DNA of 63,008 nt, filler included, from Octopus bimaculoides (lineage: Eukaryota), in NCBI RefSeq assembly GCF_001194135.2. It is 6 parts of 5 records of this genome, joined end to end, with 100 filler letters (N's around TTAATTAATTAA, not from the genome) between each part and the next. Parts side by side here need not be neighbours in the genome. Positions count along the whole stretch, not along the records: positions 1 to 13,868 come from NC_068983.1; 5 more parts are not named here. One strand, 5' to 3'. Positions 371 to 13,203 of the stretch are shown one piece after another. The notes beneath the pieces are model-generated. The model was given only the letters and a program-made list of their open reading frames with translations. It made no database searches and was not told the origin of the DNA. Position numbers and translations under genes: made by a program. Positions within the stretch are counted from its first letter, which is position 1. The number at the start of each line of letters is the position of its first letter.

Positions 371-404
371 CTTGTCTTCTTATAAGAAATATCTATAACT
401 AAGA

Positions 405-520
405 AAGCCCGTTGTCAAGCGGTTAAGTAACTGGGCTCTCAATCATGACTTTATGGGTTCAATTCCCACCGCTTCATTTCACACTGCTCCTGTCTACTCG
501 GTTGGCAAAATGAACATTAA
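405..520 (+). mobile_element. Old, diverged SINE family C 5' fragment
   Basis: tRNA-like A/B boxes (GCGGTTAAG...GGTTCAATTCC) followed by TTCACACTGCTCCTGTCTACTCGGTTGGCAAAATGA, similar to TTCACGTTGCTCCAGTCCACTCAGCTGGCAAAAATGA in the copy at 48986-49311. Confidence 0.45.
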
Positions 521-940
521 GAGTGACAGAGTGTCTGGTCAGCAACAACATAGTCTTGCAGTGTTAATAAATTAGAGGTACGACCAAAAACATACGAGCA
601 TTGACGGTGGAAACATTGAGTAGTGGGCTGCTGTGCCCTATCTTTGCCCTTTCATACCTATAACTACATTGATGTGCTTCATGTTTTTTTTTAAGACGTT
701 ATGATGTGGATTCAGGTGAATTCAGCAACTGTTTTAGCTGGCCAATATCATAGAGACTATACGTTAGCCCTTGGATGTTTTAAAGGCATATAGAGTTGCA
801 GACATAGACAGACAGTAGAGAAAGGAAGTGTTTTTTCTTCTTTTTCATATGTATTTATCAGTATAAGTAGGCAGAGACAGGAGGAAGTTTGTCTGTGATA
901 CTTGAGAACATTGTGCTCTAAAGGAAATTGTGAAATTGAT

Positions 941-1007
<67 letters not shown>

Positions 1008-1141
1008 CAGCAGCAGCAGCGCCAGAGCGACAACAACTTCTTCGGCAGGAAAATGATAACAACAGTACCTTCAGGCAGAGAAAATAACAACAAAAGCAAC
1101 AGTAACAGCTGCAACAGCTAATAATCATCATCATCATAATA

Positions 1142-3095: not shown

Positions 3096-3463
3096 NNNNN
3101 NNNNNNNNNNNNNNNNNNNNNNNNNNNNNNNNNNNNNNNNNNNNNNNNNNNNNNNNNNNNNNNNNNNNNNNNNNNNNNNNNNNNNNNNNNNNNNNNNNNN
3201 NNNNNNNNNNNNNNNNNNNNNNNNNNNNNNNNNNNNNNNNNNNNNNNNNNNNNNNNNNNNNNNNNNNNNNNNNNNNNNNNNNNNNNNNNNNNNNNNNNNN
3301 NNNNNNNNNNNNNNNNNNNNNNNNNNNNNNNNNNNNNNNNNNNNNNNNNNNNNNNNNNNNNNNNNNNNNNNNNNNNNNNNNNNNNNNNNNNNNNNNNNNN
3401 NNNNNNNNNNNNNNNNNNNNNNNNNNNNNNNNNNNNNNNNNNNNNNNNNNNNNNNNNNNNNNN

Positions 3464-4036: not shown

Positions 4037-4303
4037 NNNNNNNNNNNNNNNNNNNNNNNNNNNNNNNNNNNNNNNNNNNNNNNNNNNNNNNNNNNNNNNN
4101 NNNNNNNNNNNNNNNNNNNNNNNNNNNNNNNNNNNNNNNNNNNNNNNNNNNNNNNNNNNNNNNNNNNNNNNNNNNNNNNNNNNNNNNNNNNNNNNNNNNG
4201 TATGTATGTGTGTATGTATGCATGTATGTATGTATATATTCACATATGAGCTGAAGCACGTATAGGTGTATTTATATGTGTTTTATATCTATATGTCTGT
4301 GCG

Positions 4304-4702: not shown

Positions 4703-5378
4703 NNNNNNNNNNNNNNNNNNNNNNNNNNNNNNNNNNNNNNNNNNNNNNNNNNNNNNNNNNNNNNNNNNNNNNNNNNNNNNNNNNNNNNNNNNNNNNNNNN
4801 NNNNNNNNNNNNNNNNNNNNNNNNNNNNNNNNNNNNNNNNNNNNNNNNNNNNNNNNNNNNNNNNNNNNNNNNNNNNNNNNNNNNNNNNNNNNNNNNNNNN
4901 NNNNNNNNNNNNNNNNNNNNNNNNNNNNNNNNNNNNNNNNNNNNNNNNNNNNNNNNNNNNNNNNNNNNNNNNNNNNNNNNNNNNNNNNNNNNNNNNNNNN
5001 NNNNNNNNNNNNNNNNNNNNNNNNNNNNNNNNNNNNNNNNNNNNNNNNNNNNNNNNNNNNNNNNNNNNNNNNNNNNNNNNNNNNNNNNNNNNNNNNNNNN
5101 NNNNNNNNNNNNNNNNNNNNNNNNNNNNNNNNNNNNNNNNNNNNNNNNNNNNNNNNNNNNNNNNNNNNNNNNNNNNNNNNNNNNNNNNNNNNNNNNNNNN
5201 NNNNNNNNNNNNNNNNNNNNNNNNNNNNNNNNNNNNNNNNNNNNNNNNNNNNNNNNNNNNNNNNNNNNNNNNNNNNNNNNNNNNNNNNNNNNNNNNNNNN
5301 NNNNNNNNNNNNNNNNNNNNNNNNNNNTCAATCTTTCACTTGATATAACACCATATATATATATGTATATATATATAC

Positions 5379-6296: not shown

Positions 6297-7861
6297 NNNN
6301 NNNNNNNNNNNNNNNNNNNNNNNNNNNNNNNNNNNNNNNNNNNNNNNNNNNNNNNNNNNNNNNNNNNNNNNNNNNNNNNNNNNNNNNNNNNNNNNNNNNN
6401 NNNNNNNNNNNNNNNNNNNNNNNNNNNNNNNNNNNNNNNNNNNNNNNNNNNNNNNNNNNNNNNNNNNNNNNNNNNNNNNNNNNNNNNNNNNNNNNNNNNN
6501 NNNNNNNNNNNNNNNNNNNNNNNNNNNNNNNNNNNNNNNNNNNNNNNNNNNNNNNNNNNNNNNNNNNNNNNNNNNNNNNNNNNNNNNNNNNNNNNNNNNN
6601 NNNNNNNNNNNNNNNNNNNNNNNNNNNNNNNNNNNNNNNNNNNNNNNNNNNNNNNNNNNNNNNNNNNNNNNNNNNNNNNNNNNNNNNNNNNNNNNNNNNN
6701 NNNNNNNNNNNNNNNNNNNNNNNNNNNNNNNNNNNNNNNNNNNNNNNNNNNNNNNNNNNNNNNNNNNNNNNNNNNNNNNNNNNNNNNNNNNNNNNNNNNN
6801 NNNNNNNNNNNNNNNNNNNNNNNNNNNNNNNNNNNNNNNNNNNNNNNNNNNNNNNNNNNNNNNNNNNNNNNNNNNNNNNNNNNNNNNNNNNNNNNNNNNN
6901 NNNNNNNNNNNNNNNNNNNNNNNNNNNNNNNNNNNNCTCTCTCTCTCTCTCTCTCTCTCAAGACATTTAACTTTTACAGCAAAACATAAAGATTATATGA
7001 AGACAGAGCATCCTTCAAAAAGTACAATTAGTTCGTGCGAGAGCAAATATCATTTAATTATGAACAAAAGATGAGAGAAATTACAAAATGTCCGAAAACT
7101 TAAAGATCTCAGCACCAAATATTTCTGAGATGTTTACCTTCGATAGAGTGGTCATTTATCCAACATGAGATTTAACTTTTATCATTTAATATTAGAGAAA
7201 CCGGAATTAAATAACTACTTCCATTGGTCTATCTTACTTATTTGTTTGCTTGGTTATCCTCTCTCTGTAAAGGAAGGCTCTCTAAGATAAAACGGGATGT
7301 TATGTGGCAGCAGTCCATAACTAGAAATTAACCAAATGATACATGATGCAAATTCTATGATGAGAATGAAATAAGAGTTGAGAAGGCCGTCACTGAAGAT
7401 CATTGATTTTTTGCCAAAAACATTATATAAATAACAACAATTTATGATACATGTTGTTGGAAGTATTCACTGTGTTATAAATATTAACCAACGACCCTCA
7501 TCCAAGATATTTTAAAGTATAAATAGGTTTCCGAAAAATTATTATTATTATTTTTTTTTTTTTTTTTTTGTAAGTTGGGGATCAACTAAGGATTAATCGT
7601 ATTTAGAGGCAAACAGGTGAAATAAATATTTCGGACATTGTCCACAAGAATTCAGATTTATACAAGAAGGACAAATATTATTTTGGAAAATTCATACCTA
7701 TCATCAGACGATATTATTAACAAAGGAATGGTTTGAGTGAAATGGCTATTAGTAGAAATCGAATCCCCGTGAAAAGCTTACCCTAAAGCTTCATGATGAT
7801 GAAGAAGAGGAAGCGGGGTTTGTGTGGTGATGGTAGTCGTGATGATGATGGTTTTGCTCGG

Positions 7862-7904
<43 letters not shown>

Positions 7905-8100
7905 GCTGGGCGAAATGCTTAGTATTTCGCTCGTCGCTACGTTCTGATTTCAAATTCCGCCGAGCTCGACTTTGCCTTTCATCCTTCGGGGTCGATAAAT
8001 TAAGTACCAGTTGCGTATTGGGGTCGATCTAATCGACTGACCCCATCCCACCCAAAAATATCAGGCCTTCTGCCATAGCAGAAAGGATTATTATTATTAT

Positions 8101-8101
<1 letters not shown>
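7905..8101 (+). mobile_element. SINE family B, 5'-truncated, within an (ATT)n array
   Basis: GGGCGAAATGCTTAG...TTCAAATTCCGCCGAG.TCGACTTTGCCTTTCATCCTTCGGGGTCGATAAATTAAGTACCAG...GAAAGGATTATTATT; matches the full copy at 34969-35179. Confidence 0.85.
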
Positions 8102-8192
<91 letters not shown>

Positions 8193-8200
8193 ACAGCAGC
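8100..8200. repeat. (AGT)n(AGC)n microsatellite
   Basis: Directly visible. Confidence 0.95.
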
Positions 8201-10164
8201 AGCAAACATCAACAAAGACAAAAGCACGATCTCCAACAAGAGAAAAGCAGTACCACCTTTTGGAGGAAAAAAAAACCCAAAAAAAGAACAGACTGAAAAC
8301 AAAGAAACAGACAACTAACATCGACAATAAAGGGAGGGGGGAAAGGTGTTGTAAGTTGATGGTTTGCTCATGTATTATTTCTACAGCAGGACTGCATGAT
8401 TTAATCAGATTAGCAGCTTTGTTTTGTTCTGGCAATTGTTAAGTAAACATTTATGCCATCGTCATGTTTTCTTGCAAGTTGGAAACTGCTGCTTCTGGTT
8501 GGAAAAGAGATGTGGTGGAAGAGGGGGGAAACTTCACGAAATAAACATATAAATAAAGTACAGTAAAGTAAAATAAATGGCGAACAATCTAGCAAACAAA
8601 GTGTTTCTTTTTTAAAAAAAAATAACAAATATATACGTTAACAATAACGAAATTTTTCGATAAAATCGTGCGAAGGCGTATTTTGATCCTAGCATCTATC
8701 GACTTTTTTTTTTGTTTTTTTACTAATTTTACCTGTTTTTATTGCTGTTGTTTTTTTTGTGTGTAAGAGAGGCAGAGATTATTCTATTTTTTAATTTTAT
8801 TTCATGATTCGTTTTAAAACTTCAAAAATATAATACGAAAAAAAAATTGAACTTACAAATAATTTTTTTTTTCTTTTAAATATAACAATAATACAAATAA
8901 CAACATTCACATTCATAACGACAACAATAATATTAGCATCAATAAGAAAAATAACAACAATAACCATAACAGTCGATAACAAATTTAACAAAGACATGTA
9001 CAGAAGTTCGTAAAAAAGAACATGTCGGGAAAATAAAATAATGACAAGAAAGACAAGATTTAACAAAGAAATAATATACAAAATATTTTCCCCAACATTC
9101 TGTCGACTTGAATATTTTCCTTTTTTGTTTCTTTTTTTTTTTTTGTTCAATTGTCAAGCTGTTTTGTTATTCTGATGTGCATAGTTTAGCGTTATTTTCC
9201 CCGCTGTTGTTTACAAAATACCATTCTATTCAAGATGGCCGATGTAGTAATGCCATGCCAGAAACACAGAAGCGATCGAATGAAACGATTGCTGTCATAT
9301 TGACAGTTCTATTGATAACAGACGACACTTAATATTCAACGTTCAAACACAGTTGTTTGATTTAACATACTAAAACACTGCTTTATATACATACATACAT
9401 GTATACATACATAAACACATACATACATACATACATACATACATACATACATACATACATACATACATACGTATATATATGTCTATGTATGTATGTGTGT
9501 GCGTGCGCGTATGTGTGGGTGTGTGGGTGTGTGTCTTCTACTTTTTACTTATTATAAATCTTCCACTGAGGAGGGATCCGGTTTCCACAAAGATACGAGG
9601 CTCTTTTCCACAGGACGCCTGAAAGTGTTGCGCCCGATTTGTGAGTTTTACGGCTGTTGCAAAAAGCAGATCGAAATTGGTGGAAGAAATCCTCTATTTC
9701 AAATGCAAGGAGAAAAAATATGGACCAAAAAGGGCCACCTCTGTATACAAGATATTTACTTGTATGGTGGGGTTGAAGCTGAGGAGAGGGTGCGTAGAGG
9801 TTCAGGAGTGGGAAGGGTTGGTTTTAAAATAATGTGTGACCGAGTATATATATGTGTGTGTACTTGTCTGTATCAAAGTTGGGTGTGGGAAATCTTATAT
9901 TAATGCCTCAGATTGCAATAAGGGGAAAGTGTCGATAGGGGAAGCTCCAACGATTATATTTATGGTATGATCGGCCAAATTGATAAGATATATCTACGGT
10001 CATGAGGGCAGTAGCAAAACAGTTCACTTTTACAGTTTAGGCAAATAAAGGAAGTCCTTTAAAATTATTCTTTTCTGAGCTATGCACTGTCTACTCTTCC
10101 TACTGCTGTTAAAATACGTTTTGTACTTTTATAGTATTCTCTACTTCATGTGGTAATGCATAGG

Positions 10165-10285
10165 GTTTTTCTTCAATGCTGGTATGTGCCCCGCTAGGGT
10201 TGTAATTTCTCCTCTCTTCAATATTAAACTAGGACTTGTGGATGTTGAATTTGATTCTGAAGGGACCTTCTGTAGCGCCACATAT
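10165..10285 (-). mobile_element. Penelope-like GIY-YIG endonuclease fragment (pseudogenised)
   Basis: Minus strand translates (YV)GATEGPFRIKFNIHKS*FN, resembling the YIG.TE..FK.R.N.HKSSF part of PLE GIY-YIG domains. Confidence 0.5.
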
Positions 10286-10402
10286 CATTTCATATATGCA
10301 CAACAGGTTAAACTATTGGAAAAGAAAAATTCCTAACACCGGGCTACAAGTAACCTTACATGTCAAGAACCTTCCTAAGTACCCTAGCTGTCCTTAATAA
10401 CA

Positions 10403-10403
<1 letters not shown>
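10283..10403 (-). mobile_element. R4/Dong-like RLE LINE, extreme 3' remnant (copy a)
   Basis: Minus strand: (AAT)n then MLLRTARVLRKVLDM* and a short UTR; matches the LLGTARILRKVL* terminus seen in copy f. Confidence 0.65.
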
Positions 10404-10462
<59 letters not shown>

Positions 10463-10504
10463 CATCATCATCGTCATTATCATCATCATTATCATTATCC
10501 TCTT

Positions 10505-11030
10505 CTTTCAATTTTGTTTCTATTTCTTGCAAAGTGTTTTCCCGACACCTAGCGCAAAGAAACTCACTGTATACATTGGTAAGCCACTAAAATAAATACA
10601 CTAGATTGTTCATTTACAAAATCATGTGATAGAAAAAAGGGGAAGAAAGACAGAGAAAAAGGAAAGGAAAAGGAAAAAATGAAAAAGAAAGCAAAGAAAA
10701 TAAAGGGGGAAAAGGAATTTCTCAGCAACAATGCTCTTCTCAGTGCGTGCGACGTATCAGTTAAAACAATCTTTTGCACTTCCTGCACAGATGGTAAGCT
10801 AGGGATCATTTTCAAGTAATTTTCCGTTCCTTTTCTGATCATTCCAATTGCTCCTGAAATCACTGGTATTGTGTAACTGTCTTGAGACGCCACATGTTCT
10901 TCGATTTCAATTAGCAAATCTTTATATTTTCTGAGCTTATCAAAATCTTTTACCGAGATATTATGACCACAAGGTATGCTCCTGTCAATAAATAAACAGA
11001 CTTTATTGCTTTGGTCTTTCACAATATCTG
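10505..11030 (-). mobile_element. R4/Dong-like RLE LINE 3' fragment (copy b)
   Basis: PDIV-KDQSNKVCLFIDRSIPCGHNISVKDFDKLRKYKDLLIEI...PVISGAIGMI...VQKIVLTDTSHALRRAL (PD..D..K RLE motif), then a 3' UTR ending at (GAT/AAT)n; the 5' junction abuts (AAT)n. Confidence 0.85.
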
Positions 11031-11050
11031 ATTATTATTATCATTATTAT

Positions 11051-11667
11051 TTCTTTTATCACAGGTTTTGTTGGAAATCCCGGAGTCTTGCGTAACGGGC
11101 TTGCTGCCTGTAGCCTGTCTGCTCTTTTCAACAATCTAATACTCTCCTGATTATTCTGTCTGTGCCAAGAAGTCAAACATTTTGTAACCGTTCTACTGGG
11201 CACTCTATTCCAATTTCCTTTATATTCCTTTTGATGCCTTCTGATACTGTCCCCAAGGACCCAGCAATAATTGGCCCTATCTTCACATTTTCAATTTTCC
11301 ATAGCCGGGCTATTTTGTATTTATGAGGGTTGTATTTATCTATTTTTTCGCCTTCCTTCTTGACTATTCGTGAGTCAGCGGGTCAAAGGGACACGCAACA
11401 TCAGCTATATAGCACATGTGGCGCATCTTCGTCGACCACCTCTAGGTCCGGAATGTTATGCTCTAGCACCTGATCTGTTTGAATTAGGAAATCCCAGAGG
11501 ATTTTGCAAGTCTCCGACTCCTCCACTCTGTGCGGTTTGAGCTCATACCACGTCTTGCCTCTCTCTAACCCCCACTCTTCGCACAGTTTCCAAAGTAGCA
11601 CTTCCGCTATCTTATCGTATCGCCATAACATATTATGGTTTTGGGCAAGTCTAGAGCATTCGTTCGT

Positions 11668-11669
<2 letters not shown>
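11051..11669 (-). mobile_element. R4/Dong-like RLE LINE 3' fragment (copy c)
   Basis: ECSRLAQ...WRYDKIAEVLLWKLCEEWGLERGKTWYELKPHRVEESETCKILWDFLIQTDQVLEHNIPDLEVVD; (AAT)n at both junctions. Confidence 0.85.
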
Positions 11670-11732
<63 letters not shown>

Positions 11733-11740
11733 ATTTATCT

Positions 11741-11936
11741 CGCTGAGCGATATGTTAAGCAACATTTCGTCCGTCTTCACGTTCTGAGTTCAAGTTCCGC
11801 CGAGGTCAACTTTGCTTTTCATTCTTTCGGGGTTGATAAATTAAATACAAGTGAAACACTGTGGTCCATGTAATCGACTAGTCCTCACCAATCAATTTCA
11901 GGCTTTGTACCTTTAGTAGAAAGGATCATTATTATT

Positions 11937-11937
<1 letters not shown>
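11741..11937 (+). mobile_element. SINE family B within an (ATT/ATC)n array
   Basis: TTCTGAGTTCAAGTTCCGCCGAGGTCAACTTTGCTTTTCATTCTTTCGGGGTTGATAAATTAA...AGTAGAAAGGATCATTATTATT. Confidence 0.8.
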
Positions 11938-11989
<52 letters not shown>

Positions 11990-11992
11990 TAT

Positions 11993-12801
11993 TTACTTTT
12001 AATCTGCATGTCTGTTACAATCTCCCAGTGTCCTATAGCGAGTGAAGGATAAGAGATGTTACAGCATGACTGAAAGCTTGGGGAGGGGAAGTGGCAAGGA
12101 CAGTAGCGAAATATTTTCATTTAATGCAACACAGACATTTAAATTGATAGGGTTTTTCTAAGGATGTGGGAAGTATGTGTCAGCAAAATCTCTTGGATTT
12201 CTCTGAGACATGGTTCTCCTGGGATATTATCTAGGTGTTTCTGACATCCCTGTCTTATCATACATAGAGCACCCACAATAACAGGTACCATTCTCGCTTT
12301 AAGATGCCGCATCTTTTGTATATCAGTTTCCAGGTCCTCATATTTACTTAATTTGTCAAATTCTTTACCTCTACAAGTATTTTCTTCCCTGTCTTTAATG
12401 ACTATGTCTGGTTGATTATCCTGGATTATTTTGTCGATGCTGACTGGAAAATCCTAGAGGTTAGTGACATTTTTACTTTCAACGACTGGCTCAGGATGAA
12501 GTTCATACCAGTAAGCAGGAGTGATGTTTTTGTTGTGTTTACATACTTTCCAATGTAAATACTGTCCTACCCTATCGTGGCGACTTTTGTATTTGTTTGG
12601 TGTCTTCACAAGACATCCCGAAACGTGATAGTCTATCGTTTCATCAAATTTATCGTAGAATCTACACTTAGGATCAGAACTATTTTGAAGAATGTTAGCC
12701 TGGTACTTTTTGGTAAGTAAGTAATCTTGTGCCGCTAATATGAAACCTTTAGTCTCTACTTTCAGTCCTGAGCTTCTCAACCACTGACTGGTTGCTGTTT
12801 G
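11993..12801 (-). mobile_element. R4/Dong-like RLE LINE 3' fragment (copy d)
   Basis: QWLRSSGLKVETKGFILAAQD...DPKCRF...ETIDYHVSGC...YKSRHDRVGQYLHWKVC...WYELHPEPVVE...NQPDIVIKD...VPVIVGAL...LRKTLSI* (degenerate CCHC knuckle plus RLE); AAT/GAT repeats at both ends. Confidence 0.88.
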
Positions 12802-13203
12802 TTATTCTTATTATTATTATTAGGAATGATAGTAATAATAACATATTCCTTTAGTAATCCTGTTGTTTTAGATCGATGTATAGAATTATGTATATATAAG
12901 TATACTGTAAAGTGTTAAAATGTATGTATAATCTCGTAATATAATAATGAGCTTTGTCTTTTTGTATATTTGTATATATATATATATATNNNNNNNNNNN
13001 NNNNNNNNNNNNNNNNNNNNNNNNNNNNNNNNNNNNNNNNNNNNNNNNNNNNNNNNNNNNNNNNNNNNNNNNNNNNNNNNNNNNNNNNNNNNNNNNNNNN
13101 NNNNNNNNNNNNNNNNNNNNNNNNNNNNNNNNNNNNNNNNNNNNNNNNNNNNNNNNNNNNNTATATATGCATATACTCATTTATTATTTGTTTTATATAT
13201 ATA

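What the first reader, a model, noticed from the sequence alone, without database searches (positions are those of the whole stretch)
10283..12801. Head-to-tail chain of four different R4/Dong-like retrotransposons, each delimited by (AAT)n
Seen: four minus-strand RLE-LINE 3' fragments in the same orientation, each 5'-truncated at a different point and with different protein and 3' UTR sequence. Seven of the eight junctions fall in an (AAT)n/(GAT)n tract on the element's sense strand; the 3' end of copy a abuts a Penelope fragment instead. Known: Dong elements of the R4 clade target TAA repeats. Inference: several co-existing cephalopod R4 lineages share (AAT)n target specificity, each insertion leaves a fresh target, and chains self-propagate. 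These could be an undescribed set of microsatellite-specific retrotransposons with programmable-insertion interest.
Basis: partly seen in the sequence, partly recalled or inferred. Interest (0 to 1): 0.72.

Follow-up and report, generated by a model that had tools for sequence, protein, structure and literature searches.

The report
Dead Dong-type retrotransposon pile-up in (TAA)n

Summary
The observation largely holds. Three minus-strand fragments (12142-12804, 11137-11661, 10729-11025) match the C-terminal zinc-knuckle/restriction-like-endonuclease (RLE) region of a very large LINE family. They are cut off at three different 5' points and are only 24-42% identical to each other. A fourth piece (10358-10399) is just the last 14 codons plus a stop. 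Every internal junction lies in an (AAT)n/(GAT)n tract on the elements' sense strand.

Two corrections are needed. The stretch 11736-11924 is a plus-strand tRNA-derived SINE, so the chain is interrupted. The "Penelope" neighbour could not be confirmed.

Full-length relatives from other organisms carry a central reverse transcriptase (RT), no AP endonuclease (APE) and a C-terminal RLE. All 12 whose 3' end I could see end in (TAA)n. Seven of eight visible 5' ends abut it. Two contigs hold the same kind of head-to-tail chain.

This is the published behaviour of Dong (R4 clade): (TAA)n targeting is reported in insects, molluscs and cnidarians, and Dong-R4 elements are already annotated as abundant in octopus. 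All copies here are dead, so there is no tool value. Placement inside R4 by RT phylogeny was not possible. Verdict: already known, low interest.

The parts
12802..12822 (-). Short (TAA)n remnant upstream of fragment P4. On the sense strand it reads taataataataataagaataa. It is the only 5' tract in the chain that cannot be the tail of an upstream LINE.
11990..12804 (-). P4, the longest Dong-like 3' fragment. ORF remnant 12142-12804 with its stop at 12139-12141, and a 3' UTR of about 149 nt (11990-12138). It has one in-frame stop, a degenerate CCHC knuckle, and a deletion of about 16 residues that removes the core of the RLE.
   Evidence: (best homologue E 3.7e-78, 58% identity)
11925..11989 (.). 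Shared tail tract. It reads (ATT)3(ATC)21 on the plus strand, where it is the SINE tail. It reads (GAT)21(AAT)3 on the minus strand, where it is the P4 tail.
11736..11924 (+). tRNA-derived SINE fragment in the opposite orientation to the LINEs. It is 77% identical to a second copy at 7904-8086.
11669..11735 (.). (TAT)22 tract lying between the 5' end of the SINE and the 5' end of P3.
11052..11668 (-). P3, a Dong-like 3' fragment from a divergent lineage. ORF remnant 11137-11661 with three in-frame stops, and a short 3' UTR of about 80 nt.
   Evidence: nearest relatives P0212 at 41% and P0102 at 38%
11031..11051 (.). 21-nt tract. On the sense strand it reads ataataatgataataataatc. It joins the 3' end of P3 to the 5' end of P2.
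10499..11030 (-). P2, a Dong-like 3' fragment cut off inside the PD(I/V) motif of the RLE. ORF remnant 10729-11025. Its stop codon is lost. The pyrimidine-rich 3' UTR is about 230 nt.
10403..10498 (.). Tract joining P2 to P1. On the sense strand, mixed GAT/AAT units lie next to the P2 3' end and are followed by pure (AAT)19.
10283..10402 (-). P1, the last 14 codons plus stop (10355-10399) of a P3-like lineage, followed by 3' UTR. No (AAT)n tail follows, and the true 3' end is unknown.

Best explanation
The region is a graveyard of dead, 5'-truncated copies of Dong-type non-LTR retrotransposons. Dong-type here means RLE-bearing LINEs whose target is the (TAA)n microsatellite.

Proposed mechanism:
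1. The element's restriction-like endonuclease nicks a (TAA)n.(TTA)n duplex.
2. The nicked strand primes reverse transcription on an RNA that itself ends in (UAA)n.
3. Reverse transcription often stops early, which gives a 5'-truncated copy.
4. The new copy ends up flanked on both sides by (TAA)n in a fixed orientation.
5. Both flanks remain usable targets, so later insertions of the same or other Dong families stack up head-to-tail.

Here at least two deep lineages did this: the P4/P2 type and the P3/P1 type. A SINE with an (ATT)n tail landed in the same microsatellite in the opposite orientation, because its tail is the complement of the LINE tail. P4 and the SINE therefore share one tract tail-to-tail.

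Shown: homology, truncation points, orientation, tract positions, and the same architecture in relatives. Inferred from the literature and from those relatives: the cleavage and priming steps, and that the copies arrived one at a time.
For: - Three minus-strand fragments match the C-terminal RLE region at E 1e-28 to 1e-92, and all run to the C-terminus. The fourth matches the last 14 residues.
- The family is very large: 20,549 cluster representatives at E<=0.001.
- Full-length members are 1,100-1,240 aa with a central RVT_1 domain, no AP endonuclease, and a C-terminal zinc knuckle.
- The nearest solved structures are R2 proteins, at E 9e-30.
- All 12 relatives whose 3' end is on the contig end in (TAA)n-class repeats on the sense strand.
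- Seven of eight visible 5' ends abut such a tract. L022 is the exception.
- L004 carries three full-length elements of two families head-to-tail, separated by (TAA)11, (ATA)26 and (ATA)49.
- L021 carries a chain that includes a 5'-truncated copy starting exactly at the tract.
- In the window, all four fragments share the orientation in which the repeat reads (TAA)n. The 5' ends lie 0-8 bp from tracts that cover under 2% of the piece.
- Literature: Dong targets (TAA)n, including in molluscs (PMC3812793, PMC7998251), and Dong-R4 is abundant in octopus (PMC13282606, PMC9115989).
Against: - P1 has no (AAT)n tail, and its 3' end is undefined.
- One truncated relative (L022) has only 'aataaataa' at its 5' junction, so a long 5' tract is not obligatory.
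- In a chain, a 5' tract cannot be told apart from the tail of the upstream element. Only the 5' flank of P4 is free of that ambiguity.
- No RT is present in the window and no named R4/Dong reference sequence was available, so clade placement was not tested.
- The source genome could not be searched, so no other copies of these exact families were seen.
- The piece comes from a gap-rich assembly (five N runs), and microsatellites are where misjoins happen.
Confidence: 0.82

Rival explanations
1. One integration event made part of the chain. The reverse transcriptase jumped from one Dong RNA to the (UAA)n tail of another during a single target-primed reverse transcription, producing a chimeric head-to-tail cDNA.
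For: The P3-P2 junction is only 21 nt of repeat, and each downstream element is 5'-truncated exactly where the upstream tail begins. From general knowledge, end-to-end template jumping is a documented in-vitro property of the related R2 RT.
Against: The opposite-strand SINE between P4 and P3 needs a separate event. Chains of full-length elements separated by long tracts exist in relatives, and sequential targeting explains those more simply. Nothing in the sequence distinguishes the two routes.
Confidence: 0.08
2. The chain is wholly or partly an assembly artefact. Unrelated Dong 3' fragments that all end in (AAT)n were joined through the shared microsatellite.
For: The piece has five N runs and many microsatellites next to gaps. 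Two tracts in the chain are 67 and 96 bp long, which is hard for short reads to span.
Against: The 21-bp tracts are easily spanned. There are no Ns inside 10283-12822. The same chains occur on contigs from other assemblies.
Confidence: 0.06
3. The tracts are only RT-added 3' tails with no target preference, and the copies accumulated here by chance or because the region tolerates insertions.
For: Six of the seven tract-associated junctions in the window could be read as the tail of a neighbour. L022 lacks a clear 5' tract.
Against: All four fragments share one orientation. The 5' flank of P4 has (TAA)n with no upstream LINE. Full-length relatives have (TAA)n directly at intact 5' ends. Target specificity has been published from many copies (PMC3812793, PMC7998251).
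Confidence: 0.04

Closest known systems
Dong (Bombyx mori), DongAg (Anopheles gambiae) and DongBg (Biomphalaria glabrata): the (TAA)n-specific members of the R4 clade
   Same: Relatives have a single large ORF with a central RT and a C-terminal CCHC knuckle plus RLE, and no AP endonuclease. They carry (TAA)n on both flanks in a fixed orientation and occur in molluscs. The 5' ends of two relatives fit an HDV-like ribozyme outline, as published for Dong (PMC3774820).
   Different: The window holds only dead 3' fragments from at least three diverged families. Tails contain long (GAT)n blocks next to the element. Clade membership by RT phylogeny was not tested.
R4 of Ascaris and other nematodes
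   Same: Same clade as Dong in the literature, with an RLE architecture.
   Different: R4 inserts into a specific 28S rDNA site, whereas these sit in a microsatellite.
R2
   Same: The nearest solved structures (E 9e-30). It also has an RT, a CCHC knuckle and an RLE, and uses target-primed reverse transcription.
   Different: R2 targets 28S rDNA and has N-terminal zinc-finger and Myb domains. Pfam found no such domain in the relatives at E<=0.01.
Kibi and Koshi (R4-clade fish elements in (TC)n and (TTC)n), and microsatellite-specific HERO families
   Same: RLE LINEs that home to microsatellites (PMC3812793, PMC4640811).
   Different: They target a different repeat unit. HERO could not be excluded as the clade without an RT tree.

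Membership tests
RLE-bearing non-LTR retrotransposons (R2/R4/NeSL/CRE/HERO group) | A C-terminal CCHC zinc knuckle followed by a PD...D/E...K restriction-like endonuclease | tested here: met
   The homologue consensus has C-x2-C-x8-H-x4-C, then RPDI, then LIDxSxP, then K..KY. P4 keeps a degenerate knuckle and QPDIV but has lost the LID core. P3 has IPDLE. P2 starts at DIV and keeps FIDRS and KY.
RLE-bearing non-LTR retrotransposons (R2/R4/NeSL/CRE/HERO group) | A central reverse transcriptase and no AP endonuclease | tested here: met
   Met in full-length relatives only: RVT_1 at about residues 450-800 of 1,100-1,240 aa, and no Exo_endo_phos domain. The window copies are truncated before the RT.
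RLE-bearing non-LTR retrotransposons (R2/R4/NeSL/CRE/HERO group) | Sequence relation to an experimentally characterised member | tested here: met
   Relative P0084 matches R2 protein structures 9nl2, 9nl3, 9dou, 8gh6 and 8ibw at E 9e-30 to 1e-22, across the RT and zinc knuckle.
Dong ((TAA)n-specific R4-clade elements) | Copies flanked by (TAA)n on the sense strand at both ends | tested here: met
   In the window, seven of eight junctions. In relatives, 12 of 12 3' ends and 7 of 8 5' ends.
Dong ((TAA)n-specific R4-clade elements) | The RT groups with R4/Dong/Rex6 in a phylogeny | not testable with these tools
   There is no RT in the window. No named R4/Dong/HERO/NeSL reference sequence could be obtained: supplements were checked, cluster names, and the Dong paper is not held.
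Dong ((TAA)n-specific R4-clade elements) | An HDV-like self-cleaving ribozyme at the 5' end | tested here: inconclusive
   All window copies lack 5' ends. Rfam found nothing in L001-L003. A crude P1/P2/P3 descriptor is met at the 5' ends of L004a and L004c, but not at L003 or L006, and about 3% of shuffles also meet it.
Dong ((TAA)n-specific R4-clade elements) | A divergent N-terminal Myb/SANT-like domain without zinc fingers (PMC7998251) | not tested
   Pfam at E<=0.01 shows no N-terminal domain in six relatives. The published detection needed HHpred on an alignment.
R4 sensu stricto | Insertion at a fixed 28S rDNA site | tested here: not met
   The flanks are microsatellite, and no rRNA match was found in the piece.
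   No Pfam hit in six frames of 9536-10300 at E<=5. No homologue for the 120-codon open frame 9541-9900. Only one frame was searched against the protein database.
tRNA-derived SINE (piece 11736-11924) | A conserved core downstream of a tRNA-like head, a simple-repeat tail, and multiple copies | tested here: met
   There are two copies in the window at 77% identity. The core ...GCCTTTCATCC..GGGGTCGATAAATTAAGTAC follows tRNA-like heads in SINEs on contigs L008-L020. L008 and L016 end in (ATT)n. ARAGORN finds no tRNA, because both window copies lack the 5' half of the head.

The most novel reading that the evidence does not exclude
In this genome the (AAT)n.(ATT)n microsatellite may be a two-way landing pad. 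SINEs with (ATT)n tails, perhaps driven by the octopus RTE whose 3' UTR is a microsatellite, would create and enter the tracts in one orientation. Several Dong lineages would enter them in the other. If so, the very abundant SINE tails continually seed Dong targets, and the two kinds of element build mixed nests with a fixed antiparallel grammar.
Probability: 0.35. Interest if true: 0.3.

Novelty: already known. Interest (0 to 1): 0.14.

Why it matters
It matters little beyond annotation. The locus is a clean textbook example of how a microsatellite-homing LINE builds head-to-tail nests. It also shows that a trinucleotide tract can be shared by elements of opposite polarity. For genome annotators, the practical point is that Dong 3' fragments, SINE tails and derived (GAT)n/(AGT)n blocks should be masked together. 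Such tracts are also likely breakpoints in short-read assemblies. This locus has no engineering value, because every copy lacks its reverse transcriptase and the longest has lost its endonuclease core.

Tried and rejected
- Pfam on the three translated fragments gave nothing, because Pfam has no model for this RLE region. I built a profile from homologues instead.
- Rfam found no HDV-type ribozyme in three relatives and only low-complexity miRNA-like noise in the window. ARAGORN found no tRNA.
- Cluster look-up gave no informative names.
- Supplements of two papers held no R4/Dong reference sequences. The original Dong paper is not held. I therefore did no RT tree.
- A 25-mer of the SINE found nothing in metagenome contigs. 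An 18-mer found related SINEs.
- The flank left of 10283 gave no Pfam hit and no homologue, so I dropped the Penelope label. I ran no further search on the short minus-strand frames.
- I rejected tandem or segmental duplication as the origin of the chain, because the fragments share no DNA similarity.

Full report
**What is in the sequence.** Between 10283 and 12822 the plus strand carries five AAT-class trinucleotide tracts:
- 10403-10498, (ATT)19 followed by mixed ATC/ATT units
- 11031-11051
- 11669-11735, (TAT)22
- 11925-11989, (ATT)3(ATC)21
- 12802-12822

I collected homologues of the longest minus-strand reading frame (best E 3.7e-78, 58% identity) and aligned twelve of them. I then ran the resulting profile over all six frames of the piece. 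It finds exactly three significant matches, all on the minus strand and all running to the C-terminal end of the profile:

| Fragment | Coordinates | Profile positions | E-value |
|---|---|---|---|
| P4 | 12142-12804 | 130-364 | 1.6e-92 |
| P3 | 11137-11661 | 193-362 | 2.7e-28 |
| P2 | 10729-11025 | 265-362 | 1.6e-31 |

Each is therefore a 3' fragment cut off at a different 5' point, and each 5' end lies 0-8 bp from a tract. The three share only 24-42% amino-acid identity and no detectable DNA similarity, so they belong to different families.

**The fourth copy.** This piece (P1, 10283-10402) is only 14 codons, LLRTARVLRKVLDM followed by a stop. That peptide aligns at 64-79% identity with the very last residues of several full-length relatives. 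It resembles P3 more than P4. I accept it as probable. Its 3' limit cannot be fixed, and no (AAT)n tail follows it.

**Chance.** Pure AAT-class tracts of four or more units cover 216 of 11,900 non-N bases. My rough estimate for three independently defined 5' ends falling within 10 bp of such tracts is about 4e-7. All four fragments also share the one orientation in which the repeat reads (TAA)n on the sense strand.

- The stretch 11736-11924, between P4 and P3, is not LINE sequence. It is 77% identical to 7904-8086.
  - Both copies contain the core GCCTTTCATCC..GGGGTCGATAAATTAAGTAC. On unrelated metagenome contigs this core lies downstream of a tRNA-like head, and in two cases it is followed by an (ATT)n tail.
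  - It is therefore a tRNA-derived SINE on the plus strand. Its (ATT)n-type tail is the complement of the LINE tail, so P4 and the SINE sit tail-to-tail on one tract.
  - Both SINE copies also have (ATT)n at their 5' side.
- The "Penelope fragment" left of 10283 gave no Pfam hit in any frame. Its 120-codon open frame found no homologue. That label is unconfirmed.

**State of the copies.** All are dead, and none includes any reverse transcriptase.
- P4 has an in-frame stop and a degenerate zinc knuckle. It has also lost about 16 residues that contain the LID core of the endonuclease.
- P3 has three in-frame stops.
- P2 begins inside the PD motif and has lost its stop codon.

**What family.** An exhaustive profile search found 20,549 cluster representatives at E<=0.001. 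Full-length members are 1,100-1,240 aa. They have a central RVT_1 domain, no AP endonuclease, and the zinc knuckle plus a PD...D...K region at the C-terminus. The nearest solved structures are R2 retrotransposon proteins, at E 9e-30. These are therefore LINEs bearing a restriction-like endonuclease (RLE).

**How relatives sit in other genomes.** I fetched DNA around twelve relatives.
- Every one whose 3' end is on the contig ends in (TAA)n-class repeats on the sense strand: L001, L002, L003, three in L004, L005, L006, two in L021, L022 and L023.
- Seven of the eight 5' ends with visible upstream sequence abut the same repeat. These include intact 5' ends in L003, L004 and L006.
- The exception is a truncated copy in L022, with only "aataaataa" upstream.
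- L004 holds three full-length elements of two families head-to-tail, separated by (TAA)11, (ATA)26 and (ATA)49.
- L021 holds another chain, in which a 5'-truncated copy begins exactly at the tract.
- Both deep lineages seen in the window behave this way: the P4/P2 type (L001-L003, L021-L023) and the P3/P1 type (L004-L006).

**Mechanism.** The published picture for Dong fits. The endonuclease nicks a (TAA)n duplex, and the nick primes reverse transcription of an RNA ending in (UAA)n. Incomplete copying gives 5' truncation. The copy is left with (TAA)n on both sides, and those flanks remain targets. Repeated hits in a fixed orientation build head-to-tail nests of mixed families. Homology, orientation, junction positions and the recurrence of the architecture are shown here. 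The cleavage and priming steps, and one-at-a-time arrival, are inferred.

**Rivals.**
- Template jumping within a single event could explain the short 21-nt P3-P2 junction. It cannot explain the antisense SINE.
- An assembly misjoin through shared microsatellites cannot be excluded in this gap-rich piece. It is made less likely by the same chains occurring elsewhere.
- "Tails only, no targeting" is contradicted by intact 5' ends abutting (TAA)n in relatives, and by the 5' flank of P4, which has no upstream LINE.

**Comparison with what is known.**
- TAA microsatellites are listed as the target of Dong in Bombyx, Anopheles and the snail Biomphalaria (PMC3812793).
- Dong 5' junctions with TAA repeats, and a 5' HDV-like ribozyme, were characterised experimentally (PMC3774820).
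- Dong-R4 LINEs are annotated as a major and partly recent component of octopus genomes (PMC13282606, PMC8967140).
- A full-length Dong is noted in the O. bimaculoides repeat library (PMC9115989).

The finding is an instance of a described behaviour in a lineage where the family is already annotated. I could not place the fragments inside R4 by RT phylogeny, because no RT is present and no named reference sequences were at hand. HERO is therefore not formally excluded, and I did not verify the source organism.

**Verdict.** The novelty and tool claims are wrong. I rate this as already known and of low interest.

Noticed in passing
window 7863-8192 and 11669-11989: Two copies of a roughly 185-bp plus-strand tRNA-derived SINE (7904-8086 and 11736-11924). 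Each has (ATT)n on both sides and starts at nearly the same point in the tRNA-like head. Each tail switches after 3-5 ATT units to a long derived block: (AGT)30 in one, (ATC)21 in the other.
   Followed up: partly
window 941-1020, 1119-1191 and 8101-8192: Long (GTA/AGT)n and (GAT)n blocks lie embedded in or beside short (AAT)n/(ATT)n runs. The 941-1018 block is 96% identical to 8127-8204. Variant trinucleotide expansions seem to grow out of AAT-class tracts repeatedly in this genome.
   Followed up: no
window tails at 10463-10498, 11031-11051 and 11925-11989; relatives L001, L002, L003, L006: In all three window LINE tails the GAT-containing units lie next to the element's 3' end, and the pure AAT units lie further away. 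Several relatives' tails also begin ...GATAATAAT. The first repeat unit may be part of the element's own 3' end.
   Followed up: no
L004 1086-1200, 4856-4970, 8683-8800; L005 1-110: The 5' ends of full-length relatives start directly after (TAA)n. They can be drawn as an HDV-like ribozyme, for example P1 CCCCCG/CGGGGG, P3 TGG/CCA and P2 TAGAA/TTCTA. A crude descriptor is met by two of five distinct ends and by about 3% of shuffles. Rfam gives no hit.
   Followed up: partly
L006 79-603: Directly after the upstream (ATA)46, a full-length relative begins with 5.7 copies of a 39-bp tandem repeat and then a 19-bp repeat array. The 78 bp upstream of the tract look like the end of a tRNA-derived SINE (TTCGAATCC...), in the same orientation as the LINE.
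   Followed up: no
window 9536-10282: The sequence left of P1 has long open stretches on both strands (136 codons plus, 92 codons minus) but no Pfam or database match. Its identity, and whether it is the continuing P1 3' UTR, remain unknown.
   Followed up: partly
window 400-540 and 2650-2790: Further SINE-like sequences on the plus strand. One has a B-box-like GGGTTCAATTCCCACCGC, and the other a core resembling ...GGATCGATGAAAACCGTGT. I identified these by eye only.
   Followed up: no
window 3096-3463, 4037-4199, 4703-5327, 6297-6936 and 12990-13161: Five assembly gaps, each bordered by dinucleotide or other simple repeats. The assembly evidently breaks at microsatellites, which bears on how far joins across the long (AAT)n tracts can be trusted.
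   Followed up: no
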